The notes under the pieces were generated by a model, which saw only the letters and a list, made by a program, of their open reading frames with translations, was not told the DNA's origin and made no database searches. From Macrostomum lignano (taxonomy: Eukaryota), in the NCBI GenBank assembly GCA_002269645.1, contig NIVC01001128.1, forward strand, positions 215,810 through 279,809: DNA of 64,000 nt, in the 5' to 3' direction. Below, in pieces: positions 4,358 through 59,419 of this stretch (its first letter is position 1; every line of letters starts with the position of its first letter). The position numbers and the translations under genes are program-made.

Positions 4358-7300
4358 ATGCCAGAAGTTGTAGCTCAACCACAAAAGCAGCAACAGCAGC
4401 AGCAGTACTGCTACTCAACTGAGCAGTACTTTCGACTGCCAGATAAATCATTGACCGCCAATCGGATAGTGATGCGCAATGAGCACTGCCTTGTTGCCTT
4501 CACTTCCGCTGGCTGTCTTCTGCGATTCGAACGAAATCCAACAGTGGCTGATCAGAAACAGCCCAGCTGGAAGGAGGTGCTTCGACTGCCATTGATGAAT
4601 TTTGATGCCTGTCTGTTGGCTGATTCTCAGGCTGCCGATGAGCGTCTGGTGGTGTGGCTCGCTGGGACACTGCGGGTCTACAATATTGACAGTCTGGAGT
4701 GCGGCAGCTTCAGCAGCGTCTGCGGATTGCCTGCTGGGGTTGCCGACGCTGCCTCTGGAGCTCGGGTGGCAAAGATATTGCAGATCTCTGCCGACGAAAT
4801 GCTGCTAATGACTCGCTTGGCAACTGATGCAGTCTATGGTGAGGGCTGTGTGTGCATCATTACTTGGCTGGGCTGTCATCCTCCCTGATCCTCAGTAGCT
4901 GGGCCAGCCTCCCAAATCCTCAGTTGCTGGGCCAGCCTCCCAGATCCCCAGTTGCTGGACCAGCCTCCCAGATCCCCAGTTGTTGAGCCAGCCTCCCAGA
5001 ACCCAACAGGTTGCTGGGCTGTTAGACTCAGAATTTGCAGTCACCAGTTCTCACTGCACTCTCAAGCAGCTCTCATTTGCCCCCTCTCTCTCTTTCTCCT
5101 CGCATGGCAGACTGCTCGCTTCATCCGGTGTGCATCAGCCACCTCCGCCTGCCGCCGGAGTCCACCTGGCCGGACAAGCCGCCGCTGATGGCCGCCACCC
5201 TGGCCTGTGTGGGCCTGCCGGTTCCTCCCGAGCGACTGCTTCGACTGCAATACGACAGCCGTCAGGCCTGCCTGCACTGCCTGACGCCTGACGGTCGAGT
5301 TCTCACCATCGACTGTCTGTCCGGTTGGCTAGTTGACTCTCTGGCAGTGCCTCGGGACACCACCGATCTGCTGCTAGTTCGCAGTCACGCAGAATCGTCA
5401 ATATTAGCTCTGGCTAGTCCCAACAGCGTCACCCTAGTGGAATATCCATCCTGTAGACGTTTGCACCGATTGAGCTTGCCTAGTAAACTTGCCGATGCTC
5501 GCCTACTGGCCTGTCGGTCAACTACTGTTAGTAGAATAATCCAACAGCCGGAATTATTTGTTTGGGGCGGCAACAGTTTAGTGTATCGGCTGCGAGAAAC
5601 TTCGCCAGGTCAGCAGTATCAGAGATTGCTCGACTCGCTACAGTTTGATGAAGCTGAGCTGTGCGCTAAACGGTACGGACTGCCTATGGACCGGTTGTAC
5701 TATGCCAAGTGCAGGCATCTGCTAGATTCAGACTCTTCTAGTGCGTCTTCTTCGACACCCGTGTCGGAGGAGTCCCTGGCTGAGCTGGTCAGCTGTTTGG
5801 ATAAGCTGGCATTCTCTACTGATGTTGAATATTTGCTGTTGTTAAGCAGCTGTCTGAAAGGTGAGGGCTTGCTTTGTTATGAAGTCTGATGTCATACTCT
5901 TTGTTGCCAGGCCTTTGTGATGGTTTTTTATTTTAATCCTTCAGTGTATTGTTTAACCCGAGTCCTTCACACATCCTTCAGTGGCCTGAGCTGCCACCCC
6001 TCTGATCCTTCAGTGGCCTGAGCTGCCACCCCTCTGATCCTTCAGTGGCCTGAGCTGCCACCCCTCTGATCCTTCAGTGGCCTGAGCTGCCACCCCTCTG
6101 ATCCTTCAGTGGACTGAGCCGCCACCCCTCTGATCCTTCAGTGGCCTGAGCTGCCACCCCTCTGATCCTTCAGTGGCCTGAGCTGCCACCCCTCTGATCC
6201 TTCAGTGGACTGAGCCGCCACCCCTCTGATCCTTCAGTGGCCTGAGCTGCCACCCCTCTGATCCTTCAGTGGCCTGAGCTGCCACCCCTCTGATCCTTCA
6301 GTGGCCTGAGCTGCCACCCCTCTGATCCTTCAGTGGCCTGAGCTGCCACCCCTCTGATCCTTCAGTGGCCTGAGCTGCCACCCCTCTGATCCTTCAGTGG
6401 CCTGAGCTGCCACCCCTCTGATCCTTCAGTGGCCTGAGCTGCCACCCCTCTGATCCTTCAGTGGCCTGAGCTGCCACCCCTCTGATCCTTCAATGGCCTG
6501 AGCTGCCACCCCTCTGATCCTTCAGTAGCCTGAGCTGCCACCCCTCTGATCCTTCAGTGGCCTGAGCTGCCACCCCTCTGATCCTTCAGTGGCCTGAGCT
6601 GCCACCCCTCTGATCCTTCAGTGGCCTGAGCTGCCACCCCTCTGATCCTTCAGTGGACTGAGCCGCCACCCCTCTGATCCTTCAGTGGCCTGAGCTGCCA
6701 CCCCTCTGATCCTTCAGTGGCCTGAGCTGCCACCCCTCTGATCCTTCAGTGGCCTGAGCTGCCACCCCTCTGATCCTTCAGTGGCCTGAGCTGCCACCCC
6801 TCTGATCCTTCAGTGGACTGAGCCGCCACCCCTCTGATCCTTCAGTGGCCTGAGCTGCCACCCCTCTGATCCTTCAGTGGCCTGAGCTGCCACCCCTCTG
6901 ATCCTTCAGTGGCCTGAGCTGCCACCCCTCTGATCCTTCAGTGGCCTGAGCTGCCACCCCTCTGATCCTTCAGTGGCCTGAGCTGCCACCCCTCTGATCC
7001 TTCAGTGGCCTGAGCTGCCACCCCTCTGATCCTTCAGTGGCCTGAGCTGCCACCCCTCTGATCCTTCAGTGGCCTGAGCTGCCACCCCTCTGATCCTTCA
7101 GTGGCCTGAGCTGCCACCCCTCTGATCCTTCAATGGTCCTCAATAAAATCTACAAACAGCGCTAATTTACCTTTCTTCATCCCACTAACTCTCCCACAGC
7201 CGCCTGTAACGGGTCCAGTCCCGGCCTGCTCGAGCAGCTCCTAACAACGGTGTCGAATCAGCTGTGCCGCTATTTCTACGACCCATCTGTAGCGGTTGGC

Positions 7301-10300
7301 ACCGAAGCAGCCGATCAGTCCATCCTAGCCCGCTGGTGCGAGACCAGCGATTTAGCCGCCGCAACATTGCAACGCCTACGCGTTTGCTTACAATTGATCG
7401 AGCCGGATCAATTCAGTTTAGAAATGTGGCAATGGTTTCAAACTGTTAATATTTGTTCGTATTTTTGCGACTCTGTACTGCGCAATAATCAAGAGGAATC
7501 GGCTGTACTGTTTGCTAATTATAAGCAGACCATCTGCAGACAATTAGCAGATAGCGGAGAATATCTACAGCTGGTGCTGGACAATCTGCGCTGCTGTCAA
7601 CCGGATGGATTGCTGTCACAGCCTTGGTGCGTCTGGCTGGCTGAGGAGTTCCTGCCGGCTATGGCCGCCTCGCCTGAGTCTGCGAGGTTTGCTCCCATAG
7701 TAAGTTGATCGAGTTATGACAGCTTGCTGTTACCGGCTTGGGAGCTAGAATAGATAGAGTGGATTGGAGTGTTAGATGGAGAGAATTGGAGTGCTAGATT
7801 AAGTGGATTGGAGTGCTAGATAGAAAGGATTTGAGTGTTAAATAGAGAGGATTGGACTTCTAGATAGGGAGAATCAGCAGTGCTAGATAAGGAGAATCAG
7901 GAGTGCTAGATAGTGAGAATCGGGAGTGCTCGATAGGGAGGATCAGGAGTGCTAGACATGGAGGATCAGGAGTGCTAGATAGTGAGAATAAGGAGTGCTA
8001 GATAGTGAGAATCAGGAGTGCTAGATAGGAAGGATCAAGAGTGCTAGACATGGAGAATCAGGAGTGCTAGATATGGAGGATCAGGAGTGCTAAATAGTGA
8101 GAATCAGGAGTGCTAAATATGGAGGAGCAGGAGTGCTAGAAATGGAGGATCAGGAGCGCTAGATAAGGAGGATCAGGAGTGCTAGAAATGGAGGATCAGG
8201 AGCGCTAGATAAGGAGGATCAGGAGCGCTAGATAAGGAGGATCAGGAGTGCTAGATATGGAGGATCAGGAGTGCTAGATAGGGAGGAACAGGAGTGCTAG
8301 ACATGGAGAATGAACAGGAGTGCTAGACATGGAGAATCAGCAGCGCTAGATAAGGAGGATCAGGAGTGCTAGATAAGGAGGATCAGGAGTGCTAGATAGG
8401 TAGGAACAGGAGTGCTAGATAGGGAGGATCAGGAGTGCTAGATATGGAGGATCAGGAGTGCTAGATAGGGAGGATCAGGAGTGCTAGATATGGAGGATCA
8501 GGAGTGCTAGATAGGGAGGATCAGGAGTGCTAGATATGGAGGATCAGGAGTGCTAGATAGGGAGGAACAGGAGTGCTAGACATGGAGAATCAGGAGTGCT
8601 AGATAGGGAGGAACAGGAGTGCTAGACATGGAGGATCAGGAGTGCTAGATAGAGAGAATTAGGAATGCACCTGTACATTCGCTACTCTAATCTCACAGAT
8701 CGCTGATTGGCTAGAGGACTGCATAGACGGCCTGATCCGATTGGACGACTCCGCGGCCACCAAAGCGGACGCCTGCCGCCAGTTCTTAGCCAATCTGCTG
8801 CGCTGCGTTGGCCAACCAACTGAAGAAGCCGGGGACTCGTTTAGCCGCCCCCTGAGCCAGTTAGCTAGGGCTTTAGACGAGCTGGTGTGCCTGTGCTCCA
8901 GGTATAAACTGCGTCTGAGCGTTCGCCTCTACCGGCGTATGGATAAAGGGGATTTGGCCAAGCATATCCTGGATTATATTCTGCTTAGTCAGGATGCCGG
9001 CCTGTTTGGCCTGTTTGGAGCTTATTTGCAGGTGAGCCTCGCTGAAATGACCCCTGGTTCGATTCCGTGCGCAGCCACAATTTTCATTTTGGGGTTTTGC
9101 TCGTGCTCAGAAGCGCAAGTATCTGTACTATAAAAATACGAATTTCCTCCCGCAGGAGTGCGGCCTTAATAGCGACCAATTCTATTGCGACTATTGTTCA
9201 GCCAGGCTGCAGGCAGCCAGTGCTGCAACAGACGCGGCTATGCATATGATTGGCTCCAATAATGATGCAGCCAATCATCTGCATGGCAGCGACAGCCACG
9301 GCAGCGGTGTGAGTCCTCAGGATGCTGAGAGGACCGCTGTCACCGTACTCGGTCGAATAGTTAACGAAGACGCCAGGATGCGTTGTACTATTATGCTAGC
9401 CGAGCAGGCGACTGTGCCGTGGTCAGAGGAGGTGCAAGCAGTTGTTGAGCAGCATCTGGCTTTGAGGCATCGGCCTGATCGGGTAGTGCTGCAGCGGGCT
9501 GTAACGGCGGCTAAGACTCAGGCGCTGTTTAAACGGTAAGGCTGACTGGGGGTCTAGAGGTAGAGAAATGGGGTGTTGGCTGGGGTTAGCGGCTCATTGG
9601 GAGTGGTCTGTAGGGAGAGAAATGGGGTGGTGGCTGGGGTTAGCGGTTCACTGTGGGTCTGGAGGGAGAGAAATGGGGTGGTGGCTGGGGTTAGTGGCTC
9701 ATTGGGGGTGGTCTGTAGGGAGAGAAATGGGGTGGTGGCTGGGGTTAGTGGCTCATTGGGGGTGGTCTGTAGGGAGAGAAATGGGTGTCTCATTAGGGGT
9801 CTGGGGGGAGAGAAATGGGTGTTGGCTGGGGTTAGAGGCTCACTGTGGGTCTGGAGGGAGAGAAATGGGGTGGTGGCTGGGGTTAGTGGCTCATTGGGAG
9901 TGGTCTGTAGGGAGAGAAATGGGGTGGTGGCTGGGTTAGCGGTTCACTGTGGGTCTGTAGGGAGAGAAATGGGGTGGTGGCTGGGGTTAGTGGCTCATTG
10001 GGGGTGGTCTGTAGGGAGAGAAATGGGGTGGTGGCTGGGGTTAGTGGCTCATTGGGAGTGGTCTGTAGGGAGAGAAATGGGGTGGTGGCTGGGGTTAGTG
10101 GCTCATTGGGGGTGGTCTGTAGGGAGAGAAATGGGGTGGTGGCTGGGGTTAGTGGCTCATTGGGAGTGGTCTGTAGGGAGAGAAATGGGGTGGTGGCTGG
10201 GTTTAGTGGCTCATTGGGGGTGGTCTGTAGGGAGAGAAATGGGGTGGTGGCTGGGGTTAGCGGTTCACTGTGGGTCTGTAGGGAGAGAAATGGGGTGGTG

Positions 10301-13300
10301 GCTGGGGTTAGTGGCTCATTGGGGGTGGTCTGTAGGGAGAGAAATGGGGTGGTGGCTGGGGTTAGTGGCTCATTGGGAGTGGTCTGTAGGGAGAGAAATG
10401 GGGTGGTGGCTGGGGTTAGTGGCTCATTGGGGGTGGTCTGTAGGGAGAGAAATGGGGTGGTGGCTGGGGTTAGCGGTTCACTGTGGGTCTGTAGGGAGAG
10501 AAATGGGGTGGTGGCTGGGTTAGTGGCTCATTGGGGTGGTCTGTAGGGAGAGAAATGGGGTGGTGGCTGGGTTTAGTGGCTCATTGGGGGTGGTCTGTAG
10601 GGAGAGAAATGGGGTGGTGGCTGGGGTTAGCGGTTCACTGTGGGTCTGTAGGGAGAGAAATGGGGTGGTGGCTGGGGTTAGTGGTTCACTGTGGGTCTGT
10701 AGGGAGAGAAATGGGGTGGTGGCTGGGGTTAGTGGCTCATTGGGAGTGGTCTGTAGGGAGAGAAATGGGGTGGTGGCTGGGGTTAGTGGCTCATTGGGAG
10801 TGGTCTGTAGGGAGAGAAATGGGGTGGTGGCTGGGGTTAGTGGCTCATTGGGAGTGGTCTGTAGGGAGAGAAATGGGGTGGTGGCTGGGGTTAGCGGTTC
10901 ACTGTGGGTCTGTAGGGAGAGAAATGGGGTGGTGGCTGGGGTTAGTGGCTCATTGGGGGTGGTCTGTAGGGAGAGAAATGGGGTGGTGGCTGGGTTAGCG
11001 GTTCACTGTGGGTCTGTAGGGAGAGAAATGGGGTGGTGGCTGGGGTTAGTGGCTCATTGGGGGTGGTCTGTAGGGAGAGAAATGGGGTGGTGGCTGGGTT
11101 TAGTGGCTCATTGGGGGTGGTCTGTAGGGAGAGAAATGGGGTGGTGGCTGGGGTTAGCGGTTCACTGTGGGTCTGTAGGGAGAGAAATGGGGTGGTGGCT
11201 GGGGTTAGTGGCTCATTGGGGGTGGTCTGTAGGGAGAGAAATGGGGTGGTGGCTGGGGTTAGTGGCTCATTGGGAGTGGTCTGTAGGGAGAGAAATGGGG
11301 TGGTGGCTGGGGTTAGTGGCTCATTGGGGGTGGTCTGTAGGGAGAGAAATGGGGTGGTGGCTGGGGTTAGTGGCTCATTGGGAGTGGTCTGTAGGGAGAG
11401 AAATGGGGTGGTGGCTGGGGTTAGCGGTTCACTGTGGGTCTGTAGGGAGAGAAATGGGGTGGTGGCTGGGGTTAGTGGCTCATTGGGGGTGGTCTGTAGG
11501 GAGAGAAATGGGGTGGTGGCTGGGGTTAGCGGTTCACTGTGGGTCTGTAGGGAGAGAAATGGGGTGGTGGCTGGGGTTAGTGGCTCATTGGGGGTGGTCT
11601 GTAGGGAGAGAAATGGAGTGGTGGCTGGGTTTAGTGGCTCATTGGGGGTGGTCTGTAGGGAGAGAAATGGGGTGGTGGCTGGGGTTAGTGGCTCATTGGG
11701 AGTGGTCTGTAGGGAGAGAAATGGGGTGGTGGCTGGGGTTAGTGGCTCATCGGGGGTGGTCTGTAGGGAGAGAAATGGGGTGGTGGCTGGGGTTAGCGGT
11801 TCACTGTGGGTCTGTAGGGAGAGAAATGGGTGTTGGCTGGCGTTAGAGGCTCACTGTGGGTCTGGAGGGAGAGAAATGGGGTGTTGGCTGGGGTTAGAGG
11901 CTCACTGTGGGTCTGTAGGGAGAGAAATGGGGTGTTGGCTGGCGTTAGAGGCTCACTGTGGGTCTTGAGGGAGAGAAATGGGGTGGTGGCTGGGGTTAGT
12001 GGCTCATTAAGGGTCTGTTGGGAGAGAAATAGTGTGGTGGCTGGGGTTAGCAGCTCAGCGGTTTAGTAGGCCCAGGGGTCTGGGGAGTGAGGTGGCGTTA
12101 GCTGCTCACTAAATGGCCTCGAGAAACAAGAGACTCGAGTAATTGCTTACTGAAAAAAAGGGTATAAATGAATGTATAGTGACAGGCCCAAGCCACAAAT
12201 AAAAATAGAAAAGAGAATTTCTTATCTGTTTTGTATTATCAATTTGTTCGACTGCTTTTCAACAGTGAGACACACCCACCATTTAAAACCCCTAAAACAT
12301 TTAACAGCTACAATATCAGGCAGCACGACGCCAGCCAGCAGGACGCCCAAGCTAGGGCAGCTTTAAAAGGCCTATTCTCACAGCTGGCCAGCGGCCGAGT
12401 TACTCCGGCCACTGTCCGAGCCGATCTGCTACTATTAACGGACACGTTTGGATTTACAGTCTCGGATTTAATGACCGTGGCCGTTGATTGCGCTTTGAAA
12501 GAGGGTAGTTCCGTTAAGTGAGTAGTTGTGTTTGTCTGTTTTAATTAGTATGATTACGTAATTAACGTAAGGGAAAAATTATAGAACAAGGCATTCGGAG
12601 TATTTAATTACAGGTTTATAGTTACTCTCGTCGCTAACCTGAGCAGCCCTTTAATCTTTTGTGTCTTTAGCTCGTATAATTAGAACTAAAGAAATTGTAG
12701 AGCTGGTACCGCTAGATGTAAAATAGTTCTAATTAGATGACGAGGCGCTTAGTTATAATTGCTCTTACTGTTTACCCTTGCGGTGTGCTGTGAGGCATTG
12801 AAAGCGAATATCGCATTTCAATAATCGGTCGGTTTGGGTGCCCAGCCCAAGCGCTATACCGTAGTACCAACAGGTGTTGTGACGTTCTGCTTATTCTATA
12901 TTAATACTGACAGGCGTTATGACGCTCTGGCAAGAAGGAACTCTAGCCCTGCCTAGCAAGCTTCCCGGAAATAAAAGATTAACTCAAAGCAGGCAAACTC
13001 AAAGTGGCCGAGTAACGGACGCTTCTTATATTTAAATACTCAAGTTGAACTCAATCACAGAACTCAAATCGGTGATGGTTGGCTAATAGGTCCTGACTGT
13101 CGACTAATACTAATAGTCGACGTCTGGTGCTGCTCTTCTCTGACCCGTTCTCTGGGTTTTACTTAATCTAAATCTACAAATCGCTATGACCGATGTTTGT
13201 TTGACAAACAAAAAGGGCGAGATGCGAGAGAAAAAGGGCGCACAACAATAAATAGCAAACTCAGGCCTGGGGGCAGGGGGATAGACTGCCCGATCGGCTA

Positions 13301-16300
13301 AGCCGACGAGAACAGAACACGCACTGGCCAGCCAATCAAACCCCGCCTGGGGGAGAGGGTGCAGCACGCACAAAGCCCCGCGGCCAGCCAAACCTTGACC
13401 TGGCTCACGTCAACTCCAAGCTAGCACAAAAGTGCATCGCGCCGTGCCAAAAAGACAAGGGCAAATGCACTACAATTTCATAGTGCACGTCGTAGATGAT
13501 TCGTCGGTCGTGTCCCAGCTGACCAGGACTTTGCCAACTAACCAAGTAATCAAGTTTCCTCTTTACTGTGTCAACAGTACCCTGTTCCTCGGCTATCCTT
13601 TTCGGAACGACTTTGCCGTCTACCAGGTCGTAGAAAATTGTCAGCACCGATCAGAAGGGAGACTGGCTCATTGGCATCGCGGAGATCAAACGGATTGGCA
13701 AGATTAAGAGGCTGAATTTCTGAATGTGCGTCCAACATCACTGATGTTTGAGGTTTGCAGATCCAAGAAGTCGTGTAGCCTTTCAAAGAAACATAATTTC
13801 CGTCCTTGGAACCCGTTCTCAGAATGTGGCATCATACGATGTTCGATGTAGATTCGCTGCATCTTGTTCCAAAAGTGTTGCCACGCAGCACTTTACTTGC
13901 CTGTGTTGTAAAGCTCAACTGGCTGCTCATGTCCTGTCTGATGTAGGTTTTATTAATGGCGGTATCTAATAACTCGTAGATCAACACTCCCCAGTCAAAA
14001 CGATGCCGTTGCCTTGTCGTCGTTAACACGTCAAAAATAACGTCGCCAAATAAGCCATTTTGTCGCACGCGGTGACGTTGCTATTACGACCCCAGGCAAC
14101 GTTAGAATTTCACGTTACTGATGACCAAACGGCGATCATTCATTACAGATTGCATATACTTAGCACAGATGCTTAGCACCTTCAATATACCGAGAATCTC
14201 GAATCTATAATTCAATAAGTTTGTTCTAAGGTAGGGAATAAAAATAAACTAAGTTTATGGAGTTTATAGGTCTATGGAGATCATGGAGTATAGACTCTGG
14301 ACATCACAGGTTGCCAGAGTCCATCCTTCTGTGCAAAATTTATCCATAAGGTGTGCTTTGAAGTCATATGAGTCCTTAATGAAAGTGGGTTGAGCTTAGG
14401 CAATCGGATTAAGAAAAAAATCAATGCATTTTTCTGCCAGTGGCTTCAGAACTACATCGGCTAACAATAGGTCTGTCTGCTCGGACCCGGAAATCACATC
14501 ACATCACAGAATCACAAGATCAGGGTTCTTGTGAGTTTTTGGTAGCAGGTAGAAATGCCCGGGGCGAAGACAAGAGAACTGTTTGTTTGATATAAACTTT
14601 TTGCTACATAAAATGAGAAAGATCCACCTGATAATTTCCGCAGTCTCGGGTTTCGACGGCTGGTCCAGCTTTTGATAGGCATTAGTGTCAAGCAATTGGT
14701 CGTAGGCTGCAAGTTTGCATGATGACTACTGCGTTTCCTTTGTCCGCCTTTTATATTAGGACGGAGCTGTTTCGCTCCTGAATCGCTCTTGTCTCTGGTG
14801 CTAGCGGGCTAACTAACCCTCTTCAGCTCTCCAAAGAACTAGCTCAAGTGGATTCATAAAAATTTAAAGAGAACCAAAGAATAGTACGCACATAGCCACA
14901 AACTGTTCAGATGTAGCGTTATTGTATTTAATCGAAAAGTAGCTAAGCTTAGTACCGGCTAATAGCGGTCTAGGCGCATGAGCATGGCTGACTGACATCA
15001 AGCGGTCAGAAACGCAGACAAGTGCAAGGTCGTTAAGCCAAGTCAAGTTAACCCAATACAGTAGGCTGAAAGTAATGATATGCAAAAAAGGCATGCGATC
15101 AGTCATTAGAAAAATATAATTCACACACTCCTGCGGCAACCTAGATCGCAGTCGGTGGACATACTTCTCAGCACTAGCCAACGCCCAGCGAGCCGTCGCA
15201 GCAACCTGCGTGCAGTGCGTCGAGCATGCGCGCAGAGTTGAATTCGAAGTAAAGCAGACCCTGCTTCATTAAGCTTGTGGCATAAGCTACGTAGTTGCTG
15301 CTCATATAAGACATCAAGGCAGTAACGAGCTCAGCATCGACGTACTTTGTCGCAGGCAGGCCTGGAAAGCTAACGTCAGTCCGGTTTTAATACCGTGCAC
15401 TTGGCGGTACCACGTCCAAGCCATTCATTACTAACAGGTGTCATTGCGGTCAGCAGTGTTACACGAAGCTCACCATCGTTGTAGGTGCGCCAGTAAGCCA
15501 TCAGGCAACGCCAGACAATACCACAGATATGGCGGGGCATCCCACGGCGGTACAGCACTTGCGCGCTCATTTGGTACGCTCTGCATCTTGTAGCATGGTC
15601 GAGGAGCTCGGCGCCTTGTAACTGTTGCAAAACGAACGTTGACACAGCACGGAGTGGATAGAGTACAGTACGCTTAAGAGTTCACCGACGCCGCGACCTG
15701 ACAACTGCTTAGAATCACGCAGCTCAAAGCCCCTCACTTCCGCGTGCTGTACAAAGTGACGTTCCAGCAGCGGCTGAAAGTAGTGACCCATACGTCGTCA
15801 CCTTGGTTGATACGCTTCATCAACTGCGAATTCAATCCGGCGTATTGGCGCACAACGATCATCGCGATATCAAAGTAGACAACATTTAAGATAATATTTT
15901 GATAATTAATGCTACGTTGACCAGACGGCATTTCTTGCGTGACGCGTATCAGCTGTTGAAAGCCACGACACCTCATAACTGATTCAGCATAGCGCGGCTG
16001 GCCTACCAAAGGGGTTTTGACACGTCTTGACTAAAGCTCAGATTGCACATGACACGACCTAATTGCTTGACGAAATACACTGCTGATGAGCTGCAAAAGC
16101 ACGGGGTAGATTATTAGATTAACCAGGCAGGACATGCAGTTGATTAAATCGTAGAGTCAAGAGAGCAGGAGAGAGTGAGAGAGCAGAAGAATATCAATAT
16201 TTTTATAATACACTGTAGATGTAAATTCCAGTCTAGTTCCGATCCGATGCGCTGAGGTTCAAAGCGCGGCTTGTTCTTTGACTGTTAGTGAGTCATTTTC

Positions 16301-19300
16301 ACTGTTCGGACGCCTTGCAGTAAAATTTCACTATTAGGGCCTGTATAATATATGGGCCGGCTGATGATATATTTCTCAAGAACTCCGAGTCACTAGGCGA
16401 TTCTCTACGTGTGATATTGCATATATGCGTTGTATCATTGGCTGGCTCATTTGTTTATATGGCAAGGTGAGAAGAAATCTTGTAAGTAGGCAAGCTCACT
16501 ATGGACTACAAGTCACTAACAAATACAGGATCTTGGTTTGAAATCAGAAATCATACCTTGCAAAAGTTCCCATCAAGTAAGTTTAATATACAAGTAGGAA
16601 GCACACTACCAACATGCCTAAAAATTTAGAGTCAAGTGCACTAGACATGGCATACTCTAGCTCATGGGCTATAGAGACGTGGATAACATTCAATCAAATT
16701 TGAGTACATTAGCAAAGCCATGCAAGCCAAACCTGTGCTAAACCAACCAACATAAAAACTTTTATATTCATGTTTTGTATTCTTTACTCGTACATTGTCC
16801 AACTAATTGAAATCGGCTACCAGTGGTTTAACTTACCTTGATCCACTCGATGCAAAATCAATACAAATAATTATGCACTATTGCGAGTAATGGAATGAAG
16901 AGCACTTGTAGAACGGAGAATAGCTCGGCAGATTTTTTCAGATACGTGCGTAGTAAAGCATTATCATTTAAGGCTGATTTTATTTTCGCCTCAAGAGGGC
17001 TTCAGGACATGTGTGCAGGAGGCTAAGTGTCGTAGGGGGGGGACAAGAAAGTGTACGAGTACATCTTAAAGCTTAAAGTGCGCCAGGGTGCACGCAGCCC
17101 CCCTCCCCTGACCTCTAGCTAAAACAAATTTACCTATGACACAATACCAGATGCCGCGACCTACTGGCCTGTCCATTGCGCGATCTGGGCATCACTGTTA
17201 GCCTTCAGGATCGTCTGCAAGCCGCTCTGCGCTGCGTTCAACGCGCCCACATCGGCCTACAATTATATAATCCAGCCTACGTATCTGCTAACGAGGCCGA
17301 CTTTCTACTCGATCTTGGTTGCCTAGCAACGGACGCATATTTTTCCCAGCTATCCGAGGCCGGCTCCGATCCCGGTCCAGCCGGCCTCGAATCCGCCGTC
17401 GTAGCTCGAATCGGTCGAACTATTCGATTAATGCGATTTACCTGGCGAGCTGCTCGGTTGCTAGGCAACACTGTGCCAGATTATGAGCGCCTAATTGACA
17501 ACGGAGACGCCGCGGCGGTCGCTTATTTGGCTAAGCTGCACGGCTTGCCAAGCTCTGATTGGCTGCGCCAGCTGGCTAGTCTTCTGCTTCTAGTAGATAA
17601 CAAAAATTTGGGGGTCTCCGGCTCAACTGACACGCCTAAGCTTCTGCCATTGTTAGTGCCGGCACTGCTCACTGTTGATGGACTGTCGGTGTGGCGGGTC
17701 GCTCAGCTGCTGCTGGATGCTGGGCTGGTGAGTCATGGAATGGGATATCGGATTTCTAGCTTTATGATTCATAATATATTGGGATCTTGGATTTTTTAAA
17801 CTATATCTGTAATTGAGATTAAGGTTAATGATTCATAACTGGGATTTGAGAATTCAAGGTTTATGAATAACAGTTTGTGTCTATGATTTCAAGATTTCTG
17901 ATTCATAATTGGGACCTGGGGGATTTCAAGATTTATGATTCATATAATTGGGATCTGGGGGGATTTCAGATTTATTATTCATAATTGGGATCTGGGGGGG
18001 CTTCAAGATTTATGATTCATATAATTGAGATCTGGGGGATTTCAATATTTATGATTCATATAATTAAATTGGGATCTAGGGGATTTCAAGATTTATGATT
18101 CATATAATTGGGATCTGGGGGGATTTCAGATTTATTATTCATAATTGGGATCTGGGGGGGGGCTTCAAGATTTATGATTCATATAATTGGGATCTGGGGG
18201 GATTTCAATATTTATGATTCATATAATTGGGATCTGGGTGGGATTTCAGATTTATGATTCATAATTGGGATCTGGGGGGATTTCAAGATTTATGATTCAT
18301 ATAATTGGGATCTGGGGGGATTTCAAGATTTATGATTCATATAATTGGGATCTGGGGGGATTTCAAGATTTATGATTCATAATTGGGATCTGGGGGGACT
18401 TCAAGATTTATGATTCATATAATTGGGATCTGGGGGGATTTCAAGATTTATGATTCATAATTGGGATCTGGGGGGACTTCAAGATTTATGATTCATATAA
18501 TTGGGATCTGGGGGGATTTCAAGATTTATGATTCATAATTGGGATCTGGGGGGACTTCAAGATTTATGATTCATATAATTGGGATCTGGGGGGATTTCAA
18601 GATTTATGATTCATAATTGGGATCTGGGGGGACTTCAAGATTTATGATTCATATAATTGGGATCTGGGGGGATTTCAAGATTTATGATTCATAATTGGGA
18701 TCATAAAGTAGCGCGTATACATTATTGCTCTTTTATTGCAATTTACAATACAAACTGAGACCAAAACAATACAATGCAAATACAAACTCCCAATTCCTTT
18801 CGCTTGCAGTCGGAACTGGCCGCCCGACAAAACTTGGACGCTTTGCTCAAAGCGGCCCGAGTCTCACTGCTCGAACTTGACGATGACAGCGATATTGACA
18901 GTATCTCCGATTCTAATAGCGACATTAGCAGCGGCCTGTCCGCTCTAGGCGAGTTGCTAACCATCGCTTGCCGACTCGGAGGATTCGGTTCCGCCTTGTC
19001 GCTTCATCGCTTGCACACCTGTCTGCGTATTATTCAATCCTGCCGCTGTTGCTGCTGTCTGGCCGAGTCTGGCGCAGTGAACTCAAGCGATTCAGCTGCC
19101 CAGCTAGGCATGGCACTGGAGGTTCGCTATGAGGATTCCGCAATAATGTCGCTGCCGTCTACTCAGAGATTGATGTTTCTCAAATTGACTGGCCAGATGA
19201 TGCGGCTGACTGAACGAGCGTCGGATGCTGCGCCTGCGGTTGCGATCGATCAGGTGAGAGGAGTCGTTATTGCGATTGTTAAAGTACTGTCTTCCAGTTG

Positions 19301-22300
19301 TTCCTACCGATCACGAAATTCTTGCTTCGTTCTTTCTTTCTTTTATTCCTCCTTTTCTACAAATCCCATATTCTCCTTTCCAGGCAATTAGACTTGATTC
19401 TCGTTTCCTGGAAATCCCTCTCTCGTTTCCTTGAAATCCCACTTGCCCTTCGTTTCCTGGAAATCCCTCTCTCGTTTTCCTTGAAATCCCACTTGCCCTT
19501 CGTTTCCTGGAAATCCCTCTCTCGTTTCCTTGAAATCCCACTTGCCCTTCGTTTCCTGGAAATCCCTCTCTCGTTTTCCTTGAAATCCCACTTGCCCTTC
19601 GTTTCCTGGAAATCCCTCTCTCGTTTTCTTGAAATCCCACTTGCCCTTCGTTTCCAGGAAATCCCTCTCTCGTTTCCTTGAAATCCCACTTTTTTGCCCT
19701 TCGTTTCCTGGAAATAATACTTACCCCTCATTTACTTACCGGAAACCCACTTACCCATCGATGCCTGGAAATCTCACTGGACTCTCGTTTCCTGGAAATC
19801 CCAAATGCCCCTCGTTTCCTGGAAATCCCACTTACCTCTCGTTTCCTTAAAATCCCAAACGCCCCTCGTTTCCTGGAAATCCCACTTACCTCTCGTTTCC
19901 TTGAAATCACACTCTTATTTCTCCGAAAATGCAACTTCTTCCTTTTCTATTAATACCATTTATTTTCCTTTCCTGAAAAATCACATGGTTTTGTAATCCT
20001 TTAATCACCTAGACGCCCAGCAACGCGGCCCTAATTAACCTGGCTAGTCAGGCCATCGACACTCTTCGACTAGCTGGCCGCCCCTTAGCCGCCCTCACCC
20101 TGGCAACTCTGCTAAGCGAATTACAAGACAATACGGACTCATTAGGTGCCGCGGACAGTTTGCCGTCAATCTGCCAGGACCGCTGTCATGCGCTACTAAC
20201 TGGACTGTTATCTCAGCGTCTGGAAGCGAAACTAATCGACAAACAGCTGTGCCAGTCCACCGCCTGGTCTCTCCCGGAATCCGTTGGCCAGTCCGTTCTA
20301 CAACGGGTCGCGCAGAAATCTCGGCACTCATACAATCGATTGGAGTTCATCGCTCGCCTAGCCTATCACTATGGTGCTCAGCGGGGCAATCCTGAGCACG
20401 CTAAACGGGCACTGGCTCTGGCTAAGGGAGCCTATTGGAGTAGGACTCTGTCCGCTTTGGGTATTAAGATTGGCGACTTGACGGTGAGGAATCTAACTAT
20501 CCTTAGATCCCATCAGTTTATCCCATCCCAGATCCCACTAATTTATCCCATCCCAGATCCCATCAATTTATCCCATCCCCAGATCCCATCAATTTATTCC
20601 ATCCCAGATCCCATCAATTTATCCCATCAATTTATCCCATCTCAGATCCCATCAATTTATCCCATCCCAGATCCCATCAATTTATCCCATCCCAGATCCC
20701 ATCAATTTATCCCATCCCCAGATCCCATCAATTTATCCCATCCCAGATCCCGCCAATTTATCCCATCCCAGATCCCATCAACTTATATCATCCCCAGATC
20801 CCAAAAATGTACGCCATCTTAAGTTCTCTTAATCCGTTGTCTCTACAGATTCGAGAATCCTAGCTACAACAACAGCTGGAACCTTTATTAGATTGCACTT
20901 CACTTATGAAAATATTTCCCAGATCCTACAGTATACACTTTTTGCAAAGCGATATTTACCCTTACTATATCTGTCTGCTAATATCGCAAATATTGATTAG
21001 GCACCTGGCAAAGCGGCTGAATGCGCCGAGACTCTGTGCAGTCTACCTGTGTCTAAATCGCTGCAGCCTGATTTACTGCTATACTACTGTCAGCAGTATC
21101 AGCAGCCCGCTACCGCTCACCTGCTGCGCTACCTCGAAAATCTATTGTTTCCGCAGTCTGGCAGTCAGGTGTGTTCTTGGCGCTTTTAATGCGCTTTTGC
21201 TTTTCTAAATGTGGGTTGTCACCTTCCTACACTGTCAGTTACTGGGCCAGTCTCATCCTCAGTTGCTGGGCCAGCCTCATCCTCAGTAGCTGGGCCAGCC
21301 TCCCAGATCCTCAGTTAGTCGCTGGGCGAGTCTCCCAGATCCTTAGTTGCTGGGCCAGCCTCCCAGATACTCAGTCAGTTGCTGGGCCAGCCCCCCAGTT
21401 TCTCAGTTGCTGGGCCAGCCTCCCAGATACTCAGCTGCTGGGCCAGCCTCCCAGATCCTCAGTCAGTTACTGGGCCAGCCTCCCAGATACTCAGTCAGTT
21501 GCTGGGCCAGCCTCCCAGATCCTCAGTTGCTGGGCCAGCCTCCCAGATCCTCAGTCAGTTGCTGGGCCAGCCTCCCAGATCCTCAGTTGCTGGGCCAGCC
21601 TCCCAGATCCTCAGTTGCTGGGCCAGCCTCCCAGATCCTCAGTTGCTGGGCCAGCCTCCCAGATACTCAGTCAGTTGCTGGGCCAGCCCCCCAGTTTCTC
21701 AGTTGCTGGGCCAGCCTCCCAGATACTCAGTTGCTGGGCCAGCCTCCCAGATCCTCAGTCAGTTGCTGGGCCAGCCTCCCAGATACTCAGTCAGTTGCTG
21801 GGCCAGCCTCCCATATCCTCAGTTGCTGGGCCAGCCTCCCAGATTCTCAGTCAGTTGCTGGGCCAGTTCCCTCATCATCCCCATATCTGACTGGTGCCGC
21901 ACACGCAGGTGGAGGTCAGACAAGGTGCCGTGAACCTGGCCGGCGCCACCCTTGCCGTACTGAAGCGGGTGAGCCATCCGGACGAGCTGCTCAACCGTCT
22001 ACTCGGCTACTACGCTCAGTTGGATCCGTACGAATACGAGTCTATCGAGCTGATCTGCTGCAGCCTGCTAGCGATGCCGCAGTGCCCCGAGGCCCAGGCT
22101 GCTCATTGTAGCAGAGCTCTGCAGTTGCTCGCTTCGTTGAAGCGCTACAGACGAGTGTCTCAGATTAGCAGCTACGAGAGGAACTGGTGAGGACTTGTCA
22201 ATTCTGACTGCGTGACGCTGTGACACCCCCAATTCTGAATGCGTGACGCTTCCGGTTCTGAATGCGTGACGTCTTCAATTCTGGATGCGTGACGCATCCG

Positions 22301-25300
22301 ATTTTGAATGCGTGACGCTGTGGTGTCTTCAATTCTGAATGCATGACGCTTCTGATTCTGAATGCGTGACGCCTCTGATTCTGAATGCGTGTGACGCCTC
22401 CGATTCTGAATGCGTGACGCTGTGACACCTTCTTCTGAATGCGTGACGCTTCTGATTCTGAATGCGTGACGCTGTGACGCCTCCAATTCTGAATGCGTGA
22501 CGCTGTGACACCTTCAATTCTGAATGCGTGACGCTTTTGATTCTGAATGTGTGACGCCTCTGATTCTGAATGCGTGACGCTTCTGATTCTGAATGCGTGT
22601 GACGCCTCCGATTCTGAATGCGTGACGCTTCTGCTTTTGAATGCGTGACGCTTCCGGTTCTAAATGCGTGACACCTCCGATTCTGAATGCGTGACGCCTC
22701 GTATTCTGAATGCGTGACGCCTCCGATTCTGATCACGTGACGCCTTCAATTCTTAATGCGTGACGCCTCCGATTCTGAATGCGTGACGCCTCCGATTCTG
22801 ATCACGTGATGCCTTCAATTCTTAATGCGTGACGCATCCGATTCTAAATGCGTGACGCTGTGACACCTTCAATTCTGAATGCGTGACGCTTCTGCTTTTG
22901 AATGCGTGACGCCTCCGATTCTGATCACGTGATGCTGTGACGCCTCCAATTCTGAATGCGTGACGCCTCCGAATCTGAATGTGTGACACCTGTAATTCTG
23001 TACTTATAATGAGTGTGTCTGGTGTCCTGGCTCGGATTAACGTGTTGTTACATTAATTTTATTTACTTATTTACGCTCTGTGCCCTTGTTTACGCTCTGT
23101 TGCATATCCGCATTGAAACCGCAGGTACCAGAAGCGAATGCAGCGGCCAGACCTGGCCGAATGGTACTTCACCTCAGCGTCCGCCATCAATTCGAAGTCG
23201 TCGCGTCGTTTAAATTTATTCGCCCTACTGGAGCCCAAGCTGTACAAAATTGTGAATCCAGAATTAAGATTCGACACTCTGGACTATTGGCTGGGCGTGT
23301 CCGATCTCATTGGCATATCCGAGACCGAGCTTAAACTTTCCGCCGCTGATAAGATATTCGAGGAAGCGTTCGGTCACTCGCATCTGCAGCACCAGCAGCA
23401 GCAACAGCACGAGGCTAAAGTTAATAATTGGGCCACCCAACCCGACTTAGCCAGTCAGATGGCTGTGGCCAGGATGGAAAAGGTTGGCTTTGTTGTTGTG
23501 TCACTTGTTTAGGGTGTGTTGTGTCACTCGTTTAGGGTGTGTTGTGTCACTCGTTTAGGGTGTGTTGTGTCACTTGTTTAGGGTGTGTTGTGTCACTCGT
23601 TTAGGGTGTGTTGTGTCACTCGTTTAGGGTGTGTTGTGTCACTCGTTTAGGGTGTGTTGTGTCACTCGCTTAGGGTGTGTTGTGTCACTCGCTTAGGGTG
23701 TGTTGTGTCACTCGCTTAGGGTGTGTTGTGTCACTCGTTTAGGGTGTGTTGTGTCACTCGCTTAGGGTGTGTTGTGTCACTCGTTTAGGGTGTGTTGTGT
23801 CACTCGTTTAGGGTGTGTTGTGTCACTCGCTTAGGGTGTGTTGTGTCACTCGCTTAGGGTGTGTTGTGTCACTCGCTTAGGGTGTGTTGTGTCACTCTTT
23901 TAAGGTGTGTTGTGTCACTCGTTTAGGGTGTGTTGTTTCACTCGTTTAGGGTGTGTTGTTTCACTCGCTTAGGGTGTGTTGTGTCACTCGCTTAGGGTGT
24001 GTTGTGTCACTCGCTTAGGGTGTGTTGTGTCACTCGCTTAGGGTGTGTTGTGTCACTCGTTTAAGGTGTGTCACTGATATGATCAATGCTGTCACTGATA
24101 TGATCAATGCTGTCACTGATATGATCAATGCTGTCACTGATATGATCAATGCTGTCACTGATATGATCAATGCTGTCACTGATATGATCAATGCTGTCAC
24201 TGATATGATCAACGGTGTCACTGGTATGATCAATGGTGTCACTGATATGATAATGGTGTCACTGATATGATCAATAGTGTCACTGGTATGATCAATAGTG
24301 TCACTGGTATGATCAATAGTGTCACTGGTATGATCAGTAGTGTCACTGGTATGATCAATAGTGTCACTGGTATGATCAACAGTGTCACTGGTATGATCAA
24401 TAGTGTCACTGGTATGATCAATAGTGTCACTGGTATTATCAATGGTGTCACTGATATGATCAATAGTGTCACTGATATGATCAATGGTGTCACTGATATG
24501 ATCACCTCGCTCCCGTACAGGTGCTAACTAGCGTATACGATTCGGAGCGAGCTTTGCACGTGGCATTCGCCATGCTGAAGCGAACTAGCTTGGGCTGGTT
24601 GAAGCTGCGCATAACCCGAATCTGCCTGGCAGTTTGCCAAGCCTGGTCTGAGACTGAAACTACCGCTGCGCCGCCGCAGCCGCCTGCGACACTTCAACAG
24701 CAGAAACTAACCGGCGGTGCCGCGCAACAGTCGATTCATCGGGCCGAAGCTTCGTTGAAACGCTATCGCGACATTCTAGAAGCTCTGGAATGCGAGCAGG
24801 CACTACACGCCAACGGATTAAGCGACTGCTCAGATTTGGCTAAGCTGTGCTCAAGTCCTAGCGAACTGCTCGATCGACTGGTCTCGGCCGGTGAAGCCGA
24901 GGCTGCCAGTCAGGTGGCCGAGATTTTGGGCGCAGATCTGTCAGCTGTGGTTGCTAAGCGCGTGCAAGATTGGCTAGGCATTAAGCCGGCTGGATCGGGG
25001 GCCGATGGCTCGCCTGGTGAGTTGGCTGGGAGGGGCTTCTGATTAATGATGTTTGATTTTTTGTTAGATAGGTATCAGATAGTACTATCGCAGTATTAGG
25101 GTTATCGAATCACTCCTATTAGCTCCCTAAGAATCACTCCTATTAGTATTAGCTCCCTAAGGATCTCCCTAGGGATCACTCCTACTCGCTCCCTAAGGAT
25201 CACTCCTACTCGCTCCCTAGGGATCACTCCTATTACTCCCTATAGATCACTCCTATTAGCTCCCTATATATCACTCCTATTAGCTCCCTATATATCACTC

Positions 25301-31400: not shown

Positions 31401-32853
31401 ATTCTAATATAAATTAATAGTGCTTAACTAATAAGACCGCTTTGGAATGCCTTGAAATCCTTCTTAAAAATCCTCTTAAATCGCTGTCAATCAGGTTATC
31501 AACGGCAGCAAGATGTGGATCACCAGCGGTATGCAGGCGGACTGGATGTGCCTTCTAGCCAACACCGAGGCGTCGGTGAAAGATCCCTATCTGTCCAAAT
31601 CCCTAATCTGCCTGCCGCTAGACTTGCCCGGTGTTCAACGCGCTCGCAAGATCCGCAAAATCGGTATGCACAGCTCGGACACTGCTCAGTTATTCTTCGA
31701 GAATGTCCGAGTACCAGCCAGCTACCTTATTGGCGAGCCTGGTCAGGGATTCATTTACCAGATGCTGCAGTTTCAGGAGGAGCGACTGTTTGGGGCAGCT
31801 GCTAACCTGCTGGGCCTGGAGCTTATCATTCAGGTGCGAAATTCAAAGCTATTGATAGCCATCACACCTGCCAGATCCCCAGTTGCTGGGCCAGCCTGCC
31901 AAATCCTCAGTTGCTGGGCCAGCCCCCCAGATCCTCAGTTGCTGGGCCAGCCCCCCAGATCCTCAGTTGCTGGGCCAGGCACTTAGATTTTCAGTTGCTG
32001 GGCCAGCCTCCCAGAGTGTCAGTTGCTGGGCCAGCCTCCCAGAGTGTCAGTTACTGGGCCAGCCTCCCAGATCCCCAGTTTCCGAGCCAGCCTCCCAGAT
32101 CCTGAGTTGCTGGGCCAGCCTGCCAGATCTCCAGTTGCTGGGCCAGCCTCCCAGATCCTCAGTCAGTTACTGGGCCAGCCTCCCAGATCCTCAGTCAGTT
32201 ACTGGGCCAGCCTCCCAGATCCTCAGTCAGTTACTGGGCCAGCCTCCCAGATCCTCAGTCAGTTACTGGGCCAGCCTCCCAGATCCTCAGTCAGTTACTG
32301 GGCCAGCCTCCCAGATCCTCAGTCAGTTACTGGGCCAGCCTCCCAGATCCTCAGTCAGTTACTGGGCCAGCCTCTCAGATCCTCAGTCAGTTACTGGGCC
32401 AGACTTCCAGTGTGTCAGTTGCTGGTCCAGCCTCCCAGATCCTCAGTTTATCCACACCATAAACTACAGGAAACCGCTGAATACGCCCGTCAGCGCAAAG
32501 CCTTCGGCCAGTCTCTGCTAGACTTTCAAACTGTTCATTTTCGTCTGGCCGAACTGCTCACAGAAGTTGAGCTTCTTCGCTCAATGGTTTATCGAGCCAC
32601 GGCCAAGTACGTTGCCGGCAATGACGTCACTATGCTGGCCTCTATGGCCAAACTCAAAGCTGGCCGGCTTGTACGCGAAGTGACGGACAGCTGCCTGCAG
32701 TACTGGGGCGGCATGGGCTTCACTGACGAGGTTCGGGTTAGCCGATTCTATCGCGACGGTCGACTGCTGTCTATCGGGGCTGGCGCTGACGAAGTGATGC
32801 TGTCAATCATTTGCAAGTACATGCGCACTCTGCCTAAGCCGCCGAAGAAATGA
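28498..32853 (+). CDS. Mitochondrial acyl-CoA dehydrogenase, LCAD/IVD-type (acdh-6-like), ~411-437 aa
   Basis: Exons 28498(or ATG 28573)-28594, 29939-30429, 31495-31833 and 32470-32853 are phase-compatible. Motifs: GLLG, ACLGVSEPTAGSDVASIKT, INGSKMWIT, KIGMHSSDTAQLFFENVRVP, QFQEERL, RKAFGQ, CLQYWGGMGF, SIGAGADEVM. The Glu in EERL and its absence at the MCAD IYEGT position indicate the LCAD/IVD type. The start is uncertain. Confidence 0.9.
28725..29875. repeat. Composite 23-29-bp GACAC-rich minisatellite (GGGAAGCTGACACAGACACA...), ACAD intron
   Basis: Tandem variants inside intron 28595-29938; it causes the spurious minus-strand ORFs at 28589-29941. Confidence 0.95.
30440..31330. repeat. 24-bp then 27-bp graded minisatellite (GAGAATCGCCTCTTGACGGGCTTT to GAGAACCGCCTCTTCTTGACAGGCATT), ACAD intron
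   Basis: Three successive unit types within intron 30430-31494. Confidence 0.96.
31865..32445. repeat. Family A minisatellite, last ACAD intron
   Basis: Same 28/32-bp unit as in KNTC1 introns 1 and 10. Confidence 0.95.
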
Positions 32854-33424: not shown

Positions 33425-33790
33425 CAACTAGGAGGCTGGCCTAGCAACTGAGGATCTGGAAGGCTGGAATAGCAACTGAGGATCTAAGAGGCTGGAACAG
33501 CAACTGAGGATCTGGGAGGCTAGCCCAGCAACTGAGGATCTGGGAGGCTGGCCCAGCAGCTGAGGATCTGGGAGGCTGGCCCAGCAACTGAGGATCTAAG
33601 AGGCTGGCCCAGCAACTGAGGATCTGGGAGGCTGGCCCAGCAACTGAGGATCTGGGAGGCTGGCCCAGCAACTGAGGATCTGGGAGGCTGGCCCAGCAGC
33701 TGAGGATTTGGGAGGCTGGCCCAGCAACTGAGGATCTGGGAGGCTGGCCCAGCAACTGAGGATCTGGGAGGATTGTGGCCCAGCAACTGA
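33425..33790. repeat. Family A minisatellite in reverse orientation, between ACAD and WDR37
   Basis: GCTGGCCCAGCAACTGAGGATCTGGGAG is the reverse complement of family A. Confidence 0.95.

Positions 33791-49222: not shown

Positions 49223-59419
<10,197 letters not shown>

What the first reader, a model, noticed from the sequence alone, without database searches (positions are those of the whole stretch)
15376..16009. Endogenised dsRNA toti-like virus RdRp inside a kinetochore gene intron
Seen: three short minus-strand ORFs (15734-16009, 15567-15791, 15376-15645) join through two frameshifts into one peptide, MPSGQRSINYQNIILNVVYF - 23 aa - RINQGDDVWV - GFELRDSKQLSGRGVGELLSVLY - YPLRAVSTFVL - QVLYRRG. 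Known: this is the motif B (SG..T..N..LN..Y), motif C (GDD), D/E (SKQ..GEFLR) and post-E (GY..RA, RRG) series of Ghabrivirales (toti-like) RdRps. RNA viruses encode no integrase, and toti-like viruses are reported from planarians. Inference: this is a germline fossil of a probably undescribed dsRNA virus of this animal. Weaker coding-like sequence suggests it extends to about 14864-16090.
Basis: partly seen in the sequence, partly recalled or inferred. Interest (0 to 1): 0.9.

Follow-up and report, generated by a model that had tools for sequence, protein, structure and literature searches.

The report
Broken toti-like virus polymerase fossil
A roughly 0.8-kb broken piece of the RNA polymerase gene of a toti-like double-stranded RNA virus sits, antisense, inside an intron of the kinetochore gene KNTC1 of a Macrostomum-like flatworm; it is a genuine viral fossil of a well-known kind and almost certainly has no function today.

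Summary
The three minus-strand ORFs exist. Each is colinear with the C-terminal half of toti-like (Ghabrivirales) RdRps.

- **Homology:** the GDD-bearing ORF alone finds 84 proteins at E<=1e-3 among 1.84 billion (best 5.6e-10). All nine hits tested carry Pfam RdRP_4. Named hits are Totiviridae sp., Murri virus, Ilomantsi totivirus 1 and Persimmon latent virus.
- **Extent:** a profile of 40 intact relatives matches four pieces in all three frames (iE 1.3e-20, 3.6e-4, 8.5e-14, 0.016). They cover only profile positions 522-779 of 990.
- **Missing parts:** the N-terminal half of the polymerase (motif A and upstream), the last ~200 positions and any capsid gene are absent. Both flanks score at noise level.
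- **Bounds and breaks:** at most 15177-16021, not 14864-16090. There are at least three frame changes and no stops inside the aligned pieces.
- **Host setting:** KNTC1 domains (ARM 1st, ARM 3rd, Rod_C) lie on the plus strand on both sides. An RPL4 exon is 90% identical to Macrostomum lignano, so the host is a macrostomid flatworm, not a planarian.
- **Distance to known viruses:** identity to any relative is at most ~43%.

Verdict: a real non-retroviral endogenous viral element and a new member of a known kind. It is probably inert. I found no report of one in Macrostomum.

The parts
15177..16021 (-). Endogenous viral element: a broken fragment of a toti-like (Ghabrivirales) RdRp gene. It spans palm motifs B and C and the region downstream of them. 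It corresponds to positions ~522-779 of a 990-position profile of intact relatives. It has at least 3 frame changes, no stops inside the four aligned pieces, and is truncated at both ends.
   Evidence: Outer bounds are from tblastn of 84 relatives. Profile-aligned bounds are 15192-15958. Exhaustive HMMER gives E 5.6e-10, and the hits carry RdRP_4. Columns invariant in the relatives are kept, including S, G, N, N and G-D-D. All weak PDB hits are viral RdRps, in register.
12522..17175 (+). Inferred intron of the host KNTC1 gene that holds the element. The lower bound is uncertain: the last Pfam-supported exon upstream ends near 7708, and a possible unconfirmed plus-strand exon lies at 12231-12521.
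   Evidence: This stretch has no plus-strand ORF above 91 aa. Coding blocks with KNTC1 domains lie on either side. Exact splice sites were not determined.
5035..7708 (+). Upstream host exons of KNTC1/Rod (first ARM-repeat domain).
   Evidence: Pfam ARM_KNTC1_1st: E 8.7e-8 on 5035-5886 and E 3.6e-5 on 7250-7705.
17176..25042 (+). Downstream host exons of KNTC1/Rod. The coding blocks are 17176-17799, 18774-19391, 20160-20504 (third ARM-repeat domain) and 24521-25042 (Rod_C).
   Evidence: Pfam ARM_KNTC1_3rd E 1.6e-12. Rod_C E 0.0066, which is weak. The first two blocks are long plus-strand ORFs with no Pfam or PDB match; they are assigned to the gene by position only.
14267..14770 (-). Unverified lead: a stretch on the same strand, about 400 nt downstream of the element, that I read as a decayed N-terminal part of a retroelement reverse transcriptase. 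It is listed only because it would bear on how the element was integrated.
   Evidence: This rests on reading the frames and on memory of RT motifs. No tool supports it: Pfam, word-indexed protein search, PDB and a metagenome scan all found nothing.

Best explanation
This is a non-retroviral endogenous viral element: a dead fragment of about 0.8 kb from the RdRp gene of a toti-like dsRNA virus (order Ghabrivirales). It lies antisense in an intron of the flatworm host's KNTC1/Rod gene.

Shown here:
- The fragment is homologous to toti-type RdRps across palm motifs B and C and about 180 residues downstream.
- It lacks the N-terminal half of the polymerase, the C-terminal ~200 positions and any capsid gene.
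- Its reading frame is broken at least three times.
- It is embedded among ordinary host genes.

Inferred from established knowledge of such elements:
- Viral plus-strand RNA present in a germline cell was copied into cDNA by a host retroelement's reverse transcriptase. A partial copy was then inserted at a chromosomal break or by template switching.
- The insert was never a working gene in the host, and it has decayed neutrally since.
- Today it is most likely inert. It would be transcribed only passively, as the complement of the viral coding strand, within the KNTC1 pre-mRNA, and removed with the intron.
For: - The GDD-bearing ORF alone finds 84 proteins at E<=1e-3 among 1.84e9, best E 5.6e-10.
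- Nine of nine hits tested carry RdRP_4, and the matched stretch lies inside that domain.
- Names and taxonomy of the hits are all Ghabrivirales.
- One relative sits on a 6.4-kb RNA contig with the two-ORF toti-like layout.
- tblastn of all 84 relatives hits only 15177-16021 on the minus strand, in all three frames and colinearly.
- The profile of 40 relatives matches only positions 522-779 of 990.
- The flanks score at noise level, about -1 to -2 bits, the same as control stretches.
- A relative's upstream, presumed capsid ORF finds nothing in the window above noise.
- Residues invariant in the relatives are kept in each piece.
- All 23 weak PDB hits are viral RdRps aligned in register on motifs B and C.
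- Host genes on the contig are KNTC1, ACAD, a WD40 protein, RPL4 and IFRD.
- The host is close to Macrostomum lignano.
Against: - Pfam RdRP_4 does not score the window pieces directly, even at E<=10.
- The word-indexed search and an IMG/VR scan found nothing.
- Physical contiguity with host DNA rests on this one assembly. No reads or second assembly could be examined, and exact-product look-ups found no other contig.
- The integration mechanism is inferred. No target-site duplication or poly(A) tract is visible, and the neighbouring RT-like stretch is unconfirmed.
- The fragment cannot be a catalytically competent polymerase gene, since the N-terminal half is missing and the frame is broken at least three times. 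Absence of any other function, however, is an inference.
Confidence: 0.87

Rival explanations
1. The fragment is a real endogenous viral element that is also used. Because it lies antisense in a transcribed intron, the host pre-mRNA carries RNA complementary to the viral coding strand. That RNA could feed a small-RNA (piRNA or siRNA) pathway acting against related toti-like viruses.
For: The element is on the minus strand and the host gene on the plus strand. Exogenous Ghabrivirales viruses occur in free-living flatworms (PMC9241645). From my own knowledge of the mosquito literature, EVE-derived antisense piRNAs are documented there.
Against: No expression or small-RNA data are available here. 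The element is a single 0.8-kb fragment in an ordinary gene intron, not in a visible cluster of viral or transposon fragments. Orientation alone has a 50% chance of being antisense.
Confidence: 0.07
2. Assembly artefact or contamination: reads from an exogenous virus, or from another organism, were joined wrongly into a host contig.
For: Only one assembly was available, and contiguity could not be checked with reads.
Against: A dsRNA virus has no DNA stage, so it should not appear in DNA libraries. The piece is an internal fragment with at least three frame changes, which is not expected of a replicating virus. Non-viral sequence and KNTC1 exons continue on both sides. GC content changes only gradually across the borders.
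Confidence: 0.04
3. The motifs belong to a retroelement reverse transcriptase or arose by chance, not to a viral RdRp.
For: RT and RdRp palm domains share a distant fold. A stretch just downstream looked RT-like to me. Pfam gives no direct RdRp call on the pieces.
Against: No RT family matches any frame of 12001-17500. Every significant hit is an RdRP_4 protein from toti-like viruses. E-values down to 1.3e-20 (profile) and 5.6e-10 (whole library) exclude chance.
Confidence: 0.01
4. A domesticated, functional polymerase-derived host gene or exon.
For: The catalytic G-D-D and the motif B residues are still intact. There are no stops inside the aligned pieces.
Against: The frame is broken at least three times. 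The N-terminal half, with the other catalytic motifs, is missing. The fragment is antisense to the surrounding gene and inside its intron.
Confidence: 0.01

Closest known systems
Totiviridae-derived endogenous viral elements in arthropod genomes (for example the Armadillidium vulgare EVEs; Genome Biol Evol 2014, PMC4231630)
   Same: Short RdRp-derived fragments of toti-like viruses in an animal nuclear genome. They carry frameshifts, have only moderate identity to exogenous viruses, and show no clear target-site duplications. The origin and fate proposed here are the same.
   Different: The host here is a macrostomid flatworm, not an arthropod. I found no paper reporting a toti-like EVE in Macrostomum or in other flatworm genomes in the searchable library. 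Only one fragment could be seen, because only one 64-kb window was available.
Exogenous toti-like viruses of Ghabrivirales/Alphatotivirineae: Totiviridae sp. RdRp QXV86394.1, Murri virus QHA33714.1, Mute swan feces associated toti-like virus 2 QUS52818.1, Ilomantsi totivirus 1 UUV42273.1; more distantly Persimmon latent virus (Spiciviridae) and Thrips tabaci associated dsRNA virus 1
   Same: Homologous RdRp palm and post-palm region. All columns invariant in the relatives at motifs B and C are shared.
   Different: Identity is only about 30-43% over 150-255 aligned residues. The window copy is a broken fragment with no capsid gene and no N-terminal polymerase half. No relative is close enough to name a donor virus.
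Toti-like viruses of flatworms (proposed 'Tricladiviridae' and other Ghabrivirales lineages; Microbiol Spectr 2022, PMC9241645)
   Same: Same virus order and same host phylum. They show that such viruses circulate in free-living flatworms.
   Different: Those are exogenous. The authors state that the sequences were not found in flatworm genomes and lack frameshifts. None of the 11 named relatives I could look up is a flatworm virus, so kinship to that lineage is untested. One relative (P0004) comes from a fish-gill RNA sample that also held monogenean flatworm reads, which is only a weak hint.
RdRP_4-bearing 635-aa 'hypothetical protein' GAB0089599.1 on a 96-kb genomic contig of the sand fly Sergentomyia squamirostris (P0018)
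   Same: A toti-like RdRp sequence inside an animal genome assembly. It gives the longest alignment to the window element, 255 residues.
   Different: Only 32.5% identical, and an open 635-aa ORF rather than a frame-shifted fragment. It is clearly an independent event in an insect.

Membership tests
Sequence derived from a toti-like (Ghabrivirales, Pfam RdRP_4-type) RdRp | Statistically significant sequence homology to proteins that carry the RdRP_4 domain, with the match falling inside that domain | tested here: met
   84 hits at E<=1e-3, best 5.6e-10. Nine of nine tested carry PF02123 at E 1e-27 to 1e-46. A profile of 40 relatives scores iE 1.3e-20 and 8.5e-14.
Sequence derived from a toti-like (Ghabrivirales, Pfam RdRP_4-type) RdRp | Direct match of the window's own pieces to the Pfam RdRP_4 model | tested here: inconclusive
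   No Pfam family was found at E<=10 on the separate pieces or at E<=1 on whole frames. The pieces are 74-91 aa and cover only the last quarter of the model, and HMMER's filters drop weak matches. This is a detection method, not a property of the family.
Sequence derived from a toti-like (Ghabrivirales, Pfam RdRP_4-type) RdRp | Palm motifs B (S-G...N) and C (G-D-D) present, in order and at the right spacing | tested here: met
   The window residues sit on columns that are 97-100% conserved in the 40 relatives. All 23 weak PDB hits are viral RdRps aligned in register on these motifs.
Sequence derived from a toti-like (Ghabrivirales, Pfam RdRP_4-type) RdRp | Colinearity of all pieces with intact relatives | tested here: met
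   The four pieces map to profile positions 522-593, 597-622, 628-700 and 723-779, in the same order as along the minus strand.
Intact or functional viral RdRp gene | Complete catalytic domain (N-terminal half with the remaining palm and finger motifs) in one open frame | tested here: not met
   Profile positions 1-521 and 780-990 are absent from the whole window, and the flanks score at noise level. There are at least three frame changes.
Non-retroviral endogenous viral element (EVE) | Virus-derived sequence flanked on both sides by host chromosomal sequence | tested here: met
   KNTC1 domains lie on both sides. ACAD, a WD40 protein, RPL4 and IFRD lie further along the same 64-kb contig. This holds within this assembly only.
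Non-retroviral endogenous viral element (EVE) | Physical contiguity confirmed by reads or amplicons, and germline inheritance (present in many individuals or at an orthologous locus) | not testable with these tools
   No reads and no genomes of congeners are available. Exact-product look-ups found no other contig.
   No RT family matches any minus-strand frame of 12001-17500. None of the nine hits scanned in Pfam or the 11 named hits is an RT.
Flatworm-specific toti-like lineage ('Tricladiviridae') | Closest relatives are the triclad flatworm viruses | not tested
   The representative library carries no names. Of the 30 clusters looked up, 11 had names and none was a flatworm virus. No per-piece phylogeny including those viruses was made.

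The most novel reading that the evidence does not exclude
The fragment records a past germline infection of a macrostomid flatworm by a Ghabrivirales lineage with no close sequenced relative. Because it lies antisense in a constitutively expressed kinetochore gene, it could supply antisense RNA that is processed into small RNAs and gives heritable protection against related viruses. That would extend EVE-based antiviral memory from arthropods to flatworms.
Probability: 0.06. Interest if true: 0.65.

Novelty: new member of a known kind. Interest (0 to 1): 0.33.

Why it matters
Endogenous fragments of toti-like viruses are common in arthropods, nematodes, fungi and plants. This one adds a host group, the macrostomid flatworms, for which I found no published toti-like EVE. 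It shows that a Ghabrivirales virus once reached the germ line of this lineage. If the same insertion is present or absent at the orthologous KNTC1 intron of related Macrostomum species, it could give a minimum age for the flatworm-virus association. It also gives a probe for finding the living relatives in flatworm transcriptomes. Beyond that it is an ordinary, decayed genomic fossil. No new mechanism is implied.

Tried and rejected
1. Pfam on each piece and on X-marked whole frames found no family. This did not refute the finding, because the pieces are short; the link was established through intact relatives instead.
2. The word-indexed protein search with the GDD-bearing ORF found no candidate. 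An IMG/VR scan found none. Both point to the absence of close relatives.
3. PDB searches with the second and third pieces gave only chance-level, unrelated hits. PDB has no relative of the closest virus protein P0001.
4. The search for the missing polymerase half and for a capsid remnant found nothing. The profile over all six frames of the window gave only noise outside the element. A relaxed search of both flanks scored the same as control stretches. A relative's upstream ORF gave only noise-level hits in minisatellites.
5. The retroelement-neighbour idea (about 14267-14770, minus strand) is unsupported. Pfam, the word search, PDB and a metagenome scan were all negative, so it stays an unverified lead.
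6. I looked for target-site duplications, terminal repeats and a poly(A) tract around the element and found none convincing.
7. Exact-product look-ups for window ORFs, meant to find independent assemblies of the locus, found nothing on record.
8. The best-scoring RPL4 hit, labelled Scylla paramamosain, was rejected as a clue to the host. It scores high only because it holds three tandem copies at about 70% identity.
9. The block 17176-17796 could not be confirmed as KNTC1 by Pfam or PDB. It is assigned to the gene by position only.

Full report
**Observation.** The three short minus-strand ORFs named in the finding are present exactly as described, and the window peptides it quotes are there. 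I tested every piece separately and as it stands.

**First tests were negative.**
- Pfam found no family on any piece at E<=10, nor on whole minus-strand frames of 12001-17500 with stops marked X at E<=1. That means neither an RdRp nor a reverse transcriptase.
- The word-indexed protein search found no candidate for the 91-aa GDD-bearing ORF, and a scan of IMG/VR found none.
- One hint came from the PDB. All 23 weak hits of that ORF (E 0.5-1.8) were viral RdRps, namely picornavirus 3D polymerases. Each aligned in register on the S-G...N and G-D-D positions.
- The other two pieces gave only unrelated chance hits.

**The decisive test.** An exhaustive HMMER search of the same 91-aa ORF against 1.84 billion representative proteins returned 84 proteins at E<=1e-3. 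The best had E 5.6e-10 and 42% identity over 80 residues. Most hits were about 1000 aa long and matched near residues 500-640.
- All nine top hits scanned carry Pfam RdRP_4 (PF02123) at E 1e-27 to 1e-46, and the matched stretch lies inside that domain.
- Where the sources give names, they are Totiviridae sp. RdRp (QXV86394.1), Murri virus RdRp, Mute swan feces associated toti-like virus 2, Ilomantsi totivirus 1, another Totiviridae sp., Persimmon latent virus and Thrips tabaci associated dsRNA virus 1.
- The three I looked up in the NCBI taxonomy are all Ghabrivirales, suborder Alphatotivirineae.
- One relative (P0004) lies on a 6.4-kb RNA-seq contig with an 848-aa ORF directly upstream of the polymerase ORF. 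That is the classic two-ORF toti-like layout.

**Independent support from the other frames.** The 84 relatives were chosen only by their match to one ORF, yet tblastn of all of them against the whole window hits only 15177-16021 on the minus strand. The hits fall in all three frames and are colinear: 84, 63 and 45 relatives have an HSP in the three frames.
- A profile built from 40 full-length relatives (990 positions) was searched against every stop-free segment of all six frames.
- It matched four segments, all inside the element. They cover profile positions 522-593 (iE 1.3e-20), 597-622 (3.6e-4), 628-700 (8.5e-14) and 723-779 (0.016).
- Each piece keeps the residues that are invariant in the relatives. 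In the first piece these include S, G, R, N, N, Y and G-D-D, all on columns that are 97-100% conserved.

**Extent and state.**
- The profile-aligned bounds are 15192-15958. The outermost pairwise alignments reach 15177 and 16021.
- Profile positions 1-521 (the N-terminal half, with the remaining catalytic motifs) and 780-990 are absent from the entire window.
- A relaxed search of both flanks gave best scores of about -1 to -2 bits, indistinguishable from control stretches.
- A relative's upstream ORF, presumably the capsid, finds nothing in the window above noise.
- The polymerase fragment has at least three frame changes and no stop codon inside the four aligned pieces. A few pairwise alignments of the weak C-terminal end read through one to six stops.
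- I saw no target-site duplication, terminal repeat or poly(A) tract.

**Host and setting.** The window is an ordinary gene-rich animal locus whose introns are full of minisatellites.
- Plus-strand blocks carry KNTC1 first ARM repeats (5035-5886 and 7250-7705), KNTC1 third ARM repeats (20160-20504, E 1.6e-12) and, weakly, Rod_C (24521-25039).
- The element therefore lies, antisense, in an intron of the kinetochore gene KNTC1/Rod.
- Further along are an acyl-CoA dehydrogenase, a WD40 protein, RPL4 and IFRD.
- The RPL4 exon is 90% identical to a Macrostomum lignano protein. A higher-scoring crab entry is an artefact of three tandem copies.
- The host is therefore a macrostomid flatworm. It is a free-living flatworm but not a planarian.

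**What it is and how it arose.** The evidence fits a non-retroviral endogenous viral element.
- Shown: homology, truncation, frame breaks and host flanks.
- Inferred from established knowledge of such elements (summarised, for example, in PMC4231630): viral RNA in a germline cell was reverse-transcribed by a host retroelement enzyme and a partial cDNA was inserted, followed by neutral decay.
- A stretch about 400 nt downstream on the same strand looked to me like a decayed retroelement RT. That would fit template switching, but no tool supports the reading, so it remains a lead only.
- The fragment cannot encode a polymerase.
- Because it is antisense to KNTC1, the pre-mRNA would carry the complement of the viral coding strand. 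A small-RNA role is conceivable but untested.

**Comparison with what is known.**
- Toti-like EVEs are well documented in arthropods (PMC4231630).
- Exogenous Ghabrivirales viruses are documented in flatworms, where the authors state that their sequences were not found in flatworm genomes (PMC9241645).
- I found no paper linking Macrostomum with totiviruses. None of the papers returned by three searches for EVEs in flatworms or Macrostomum reports, by its title or abstract, a toti-like EVE in a flatworm genome.
- Identity to any relative is at most ~43% over about 150 residues, and the 90%-clustered collection yielded no candidate for the query. The donor virus therefore has no close sequenced relative, although a closer one hidden inside a 50% cluster cannot be fully excluded.
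- One relative comes from a fish-gill sample that also held monogenean reads. This is a weak hint only.

**Verdict.** This is a new member of a known kind: modestly interesting for flatworm paleovirology and otherwise an ordinary genomic fossil.

Noticed in passing
window 4880-5019, 21255-21866, 31867-32448 (+); 33431-33790, 63705-63937 (reverse orientation): The same ~28-nt minisatellite unit forms separate arrays in introns or spacers of different genes (KNTC1, the acyl-CoA dehydrogenase gene, near IFRD). This suggests a dispersed minisatellite family, possibly carried by a mobile element.
   Followed up: no
window 40417-44394: A 24-nt unit is repeated about 166 times (4 kb, 89% matches) right next to the RPL4 exon. 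It creates very long spurious ORFs on both strands.
   Followed up: no
window 58205-59215 (-): A 336-aa ORF with an RNase H domain (E 5.6e-11) and a weak zf-RVT match. It is probably the 3' part of a non-LTR retrotransposon, and it shows that reverse-transcribing elements are present near the locus.
   Followed up: partly
window ~13500-14800 (-): A stretch that reads like decayed retroelement coding sequence (RT N-terminus, perhaps a protease-like part), on the same strand just downstream of the viral fragment. No Pfam, protein-search, PDB or metagenome support was found.
   Followed up: partly
window 12231-12521 (+): A 96-aa plus-strand ORF with protein-like composition, lying between the minisatellite block and the viral fragment. 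It may be a further KNTC1 exon, which would shorten the intron that holds the element. Pfam gave only chance-level hits.
   Followed up: partly
L003 6001-7908 (Sergentomyia squamirostris GCA_042850755.1, contig BAAFGQ010001336.1): An open 635-aa RdRP_4 ORF, preceded by a 477-aa ORF, lies at the end of a 96-kb sand-fly genomic contig. It may be an insect toti-like EVE or viral sequence in the assembly. It gives the longest alignment to the window element.
   Followed up: no
protein P0086 (Scylla paramamosain LOC135114262): This 'uncharacterized protein' consists of three tandem copies of an RPL4 segment, which inflates its score against any RPL4 query.
   Followed up: yes
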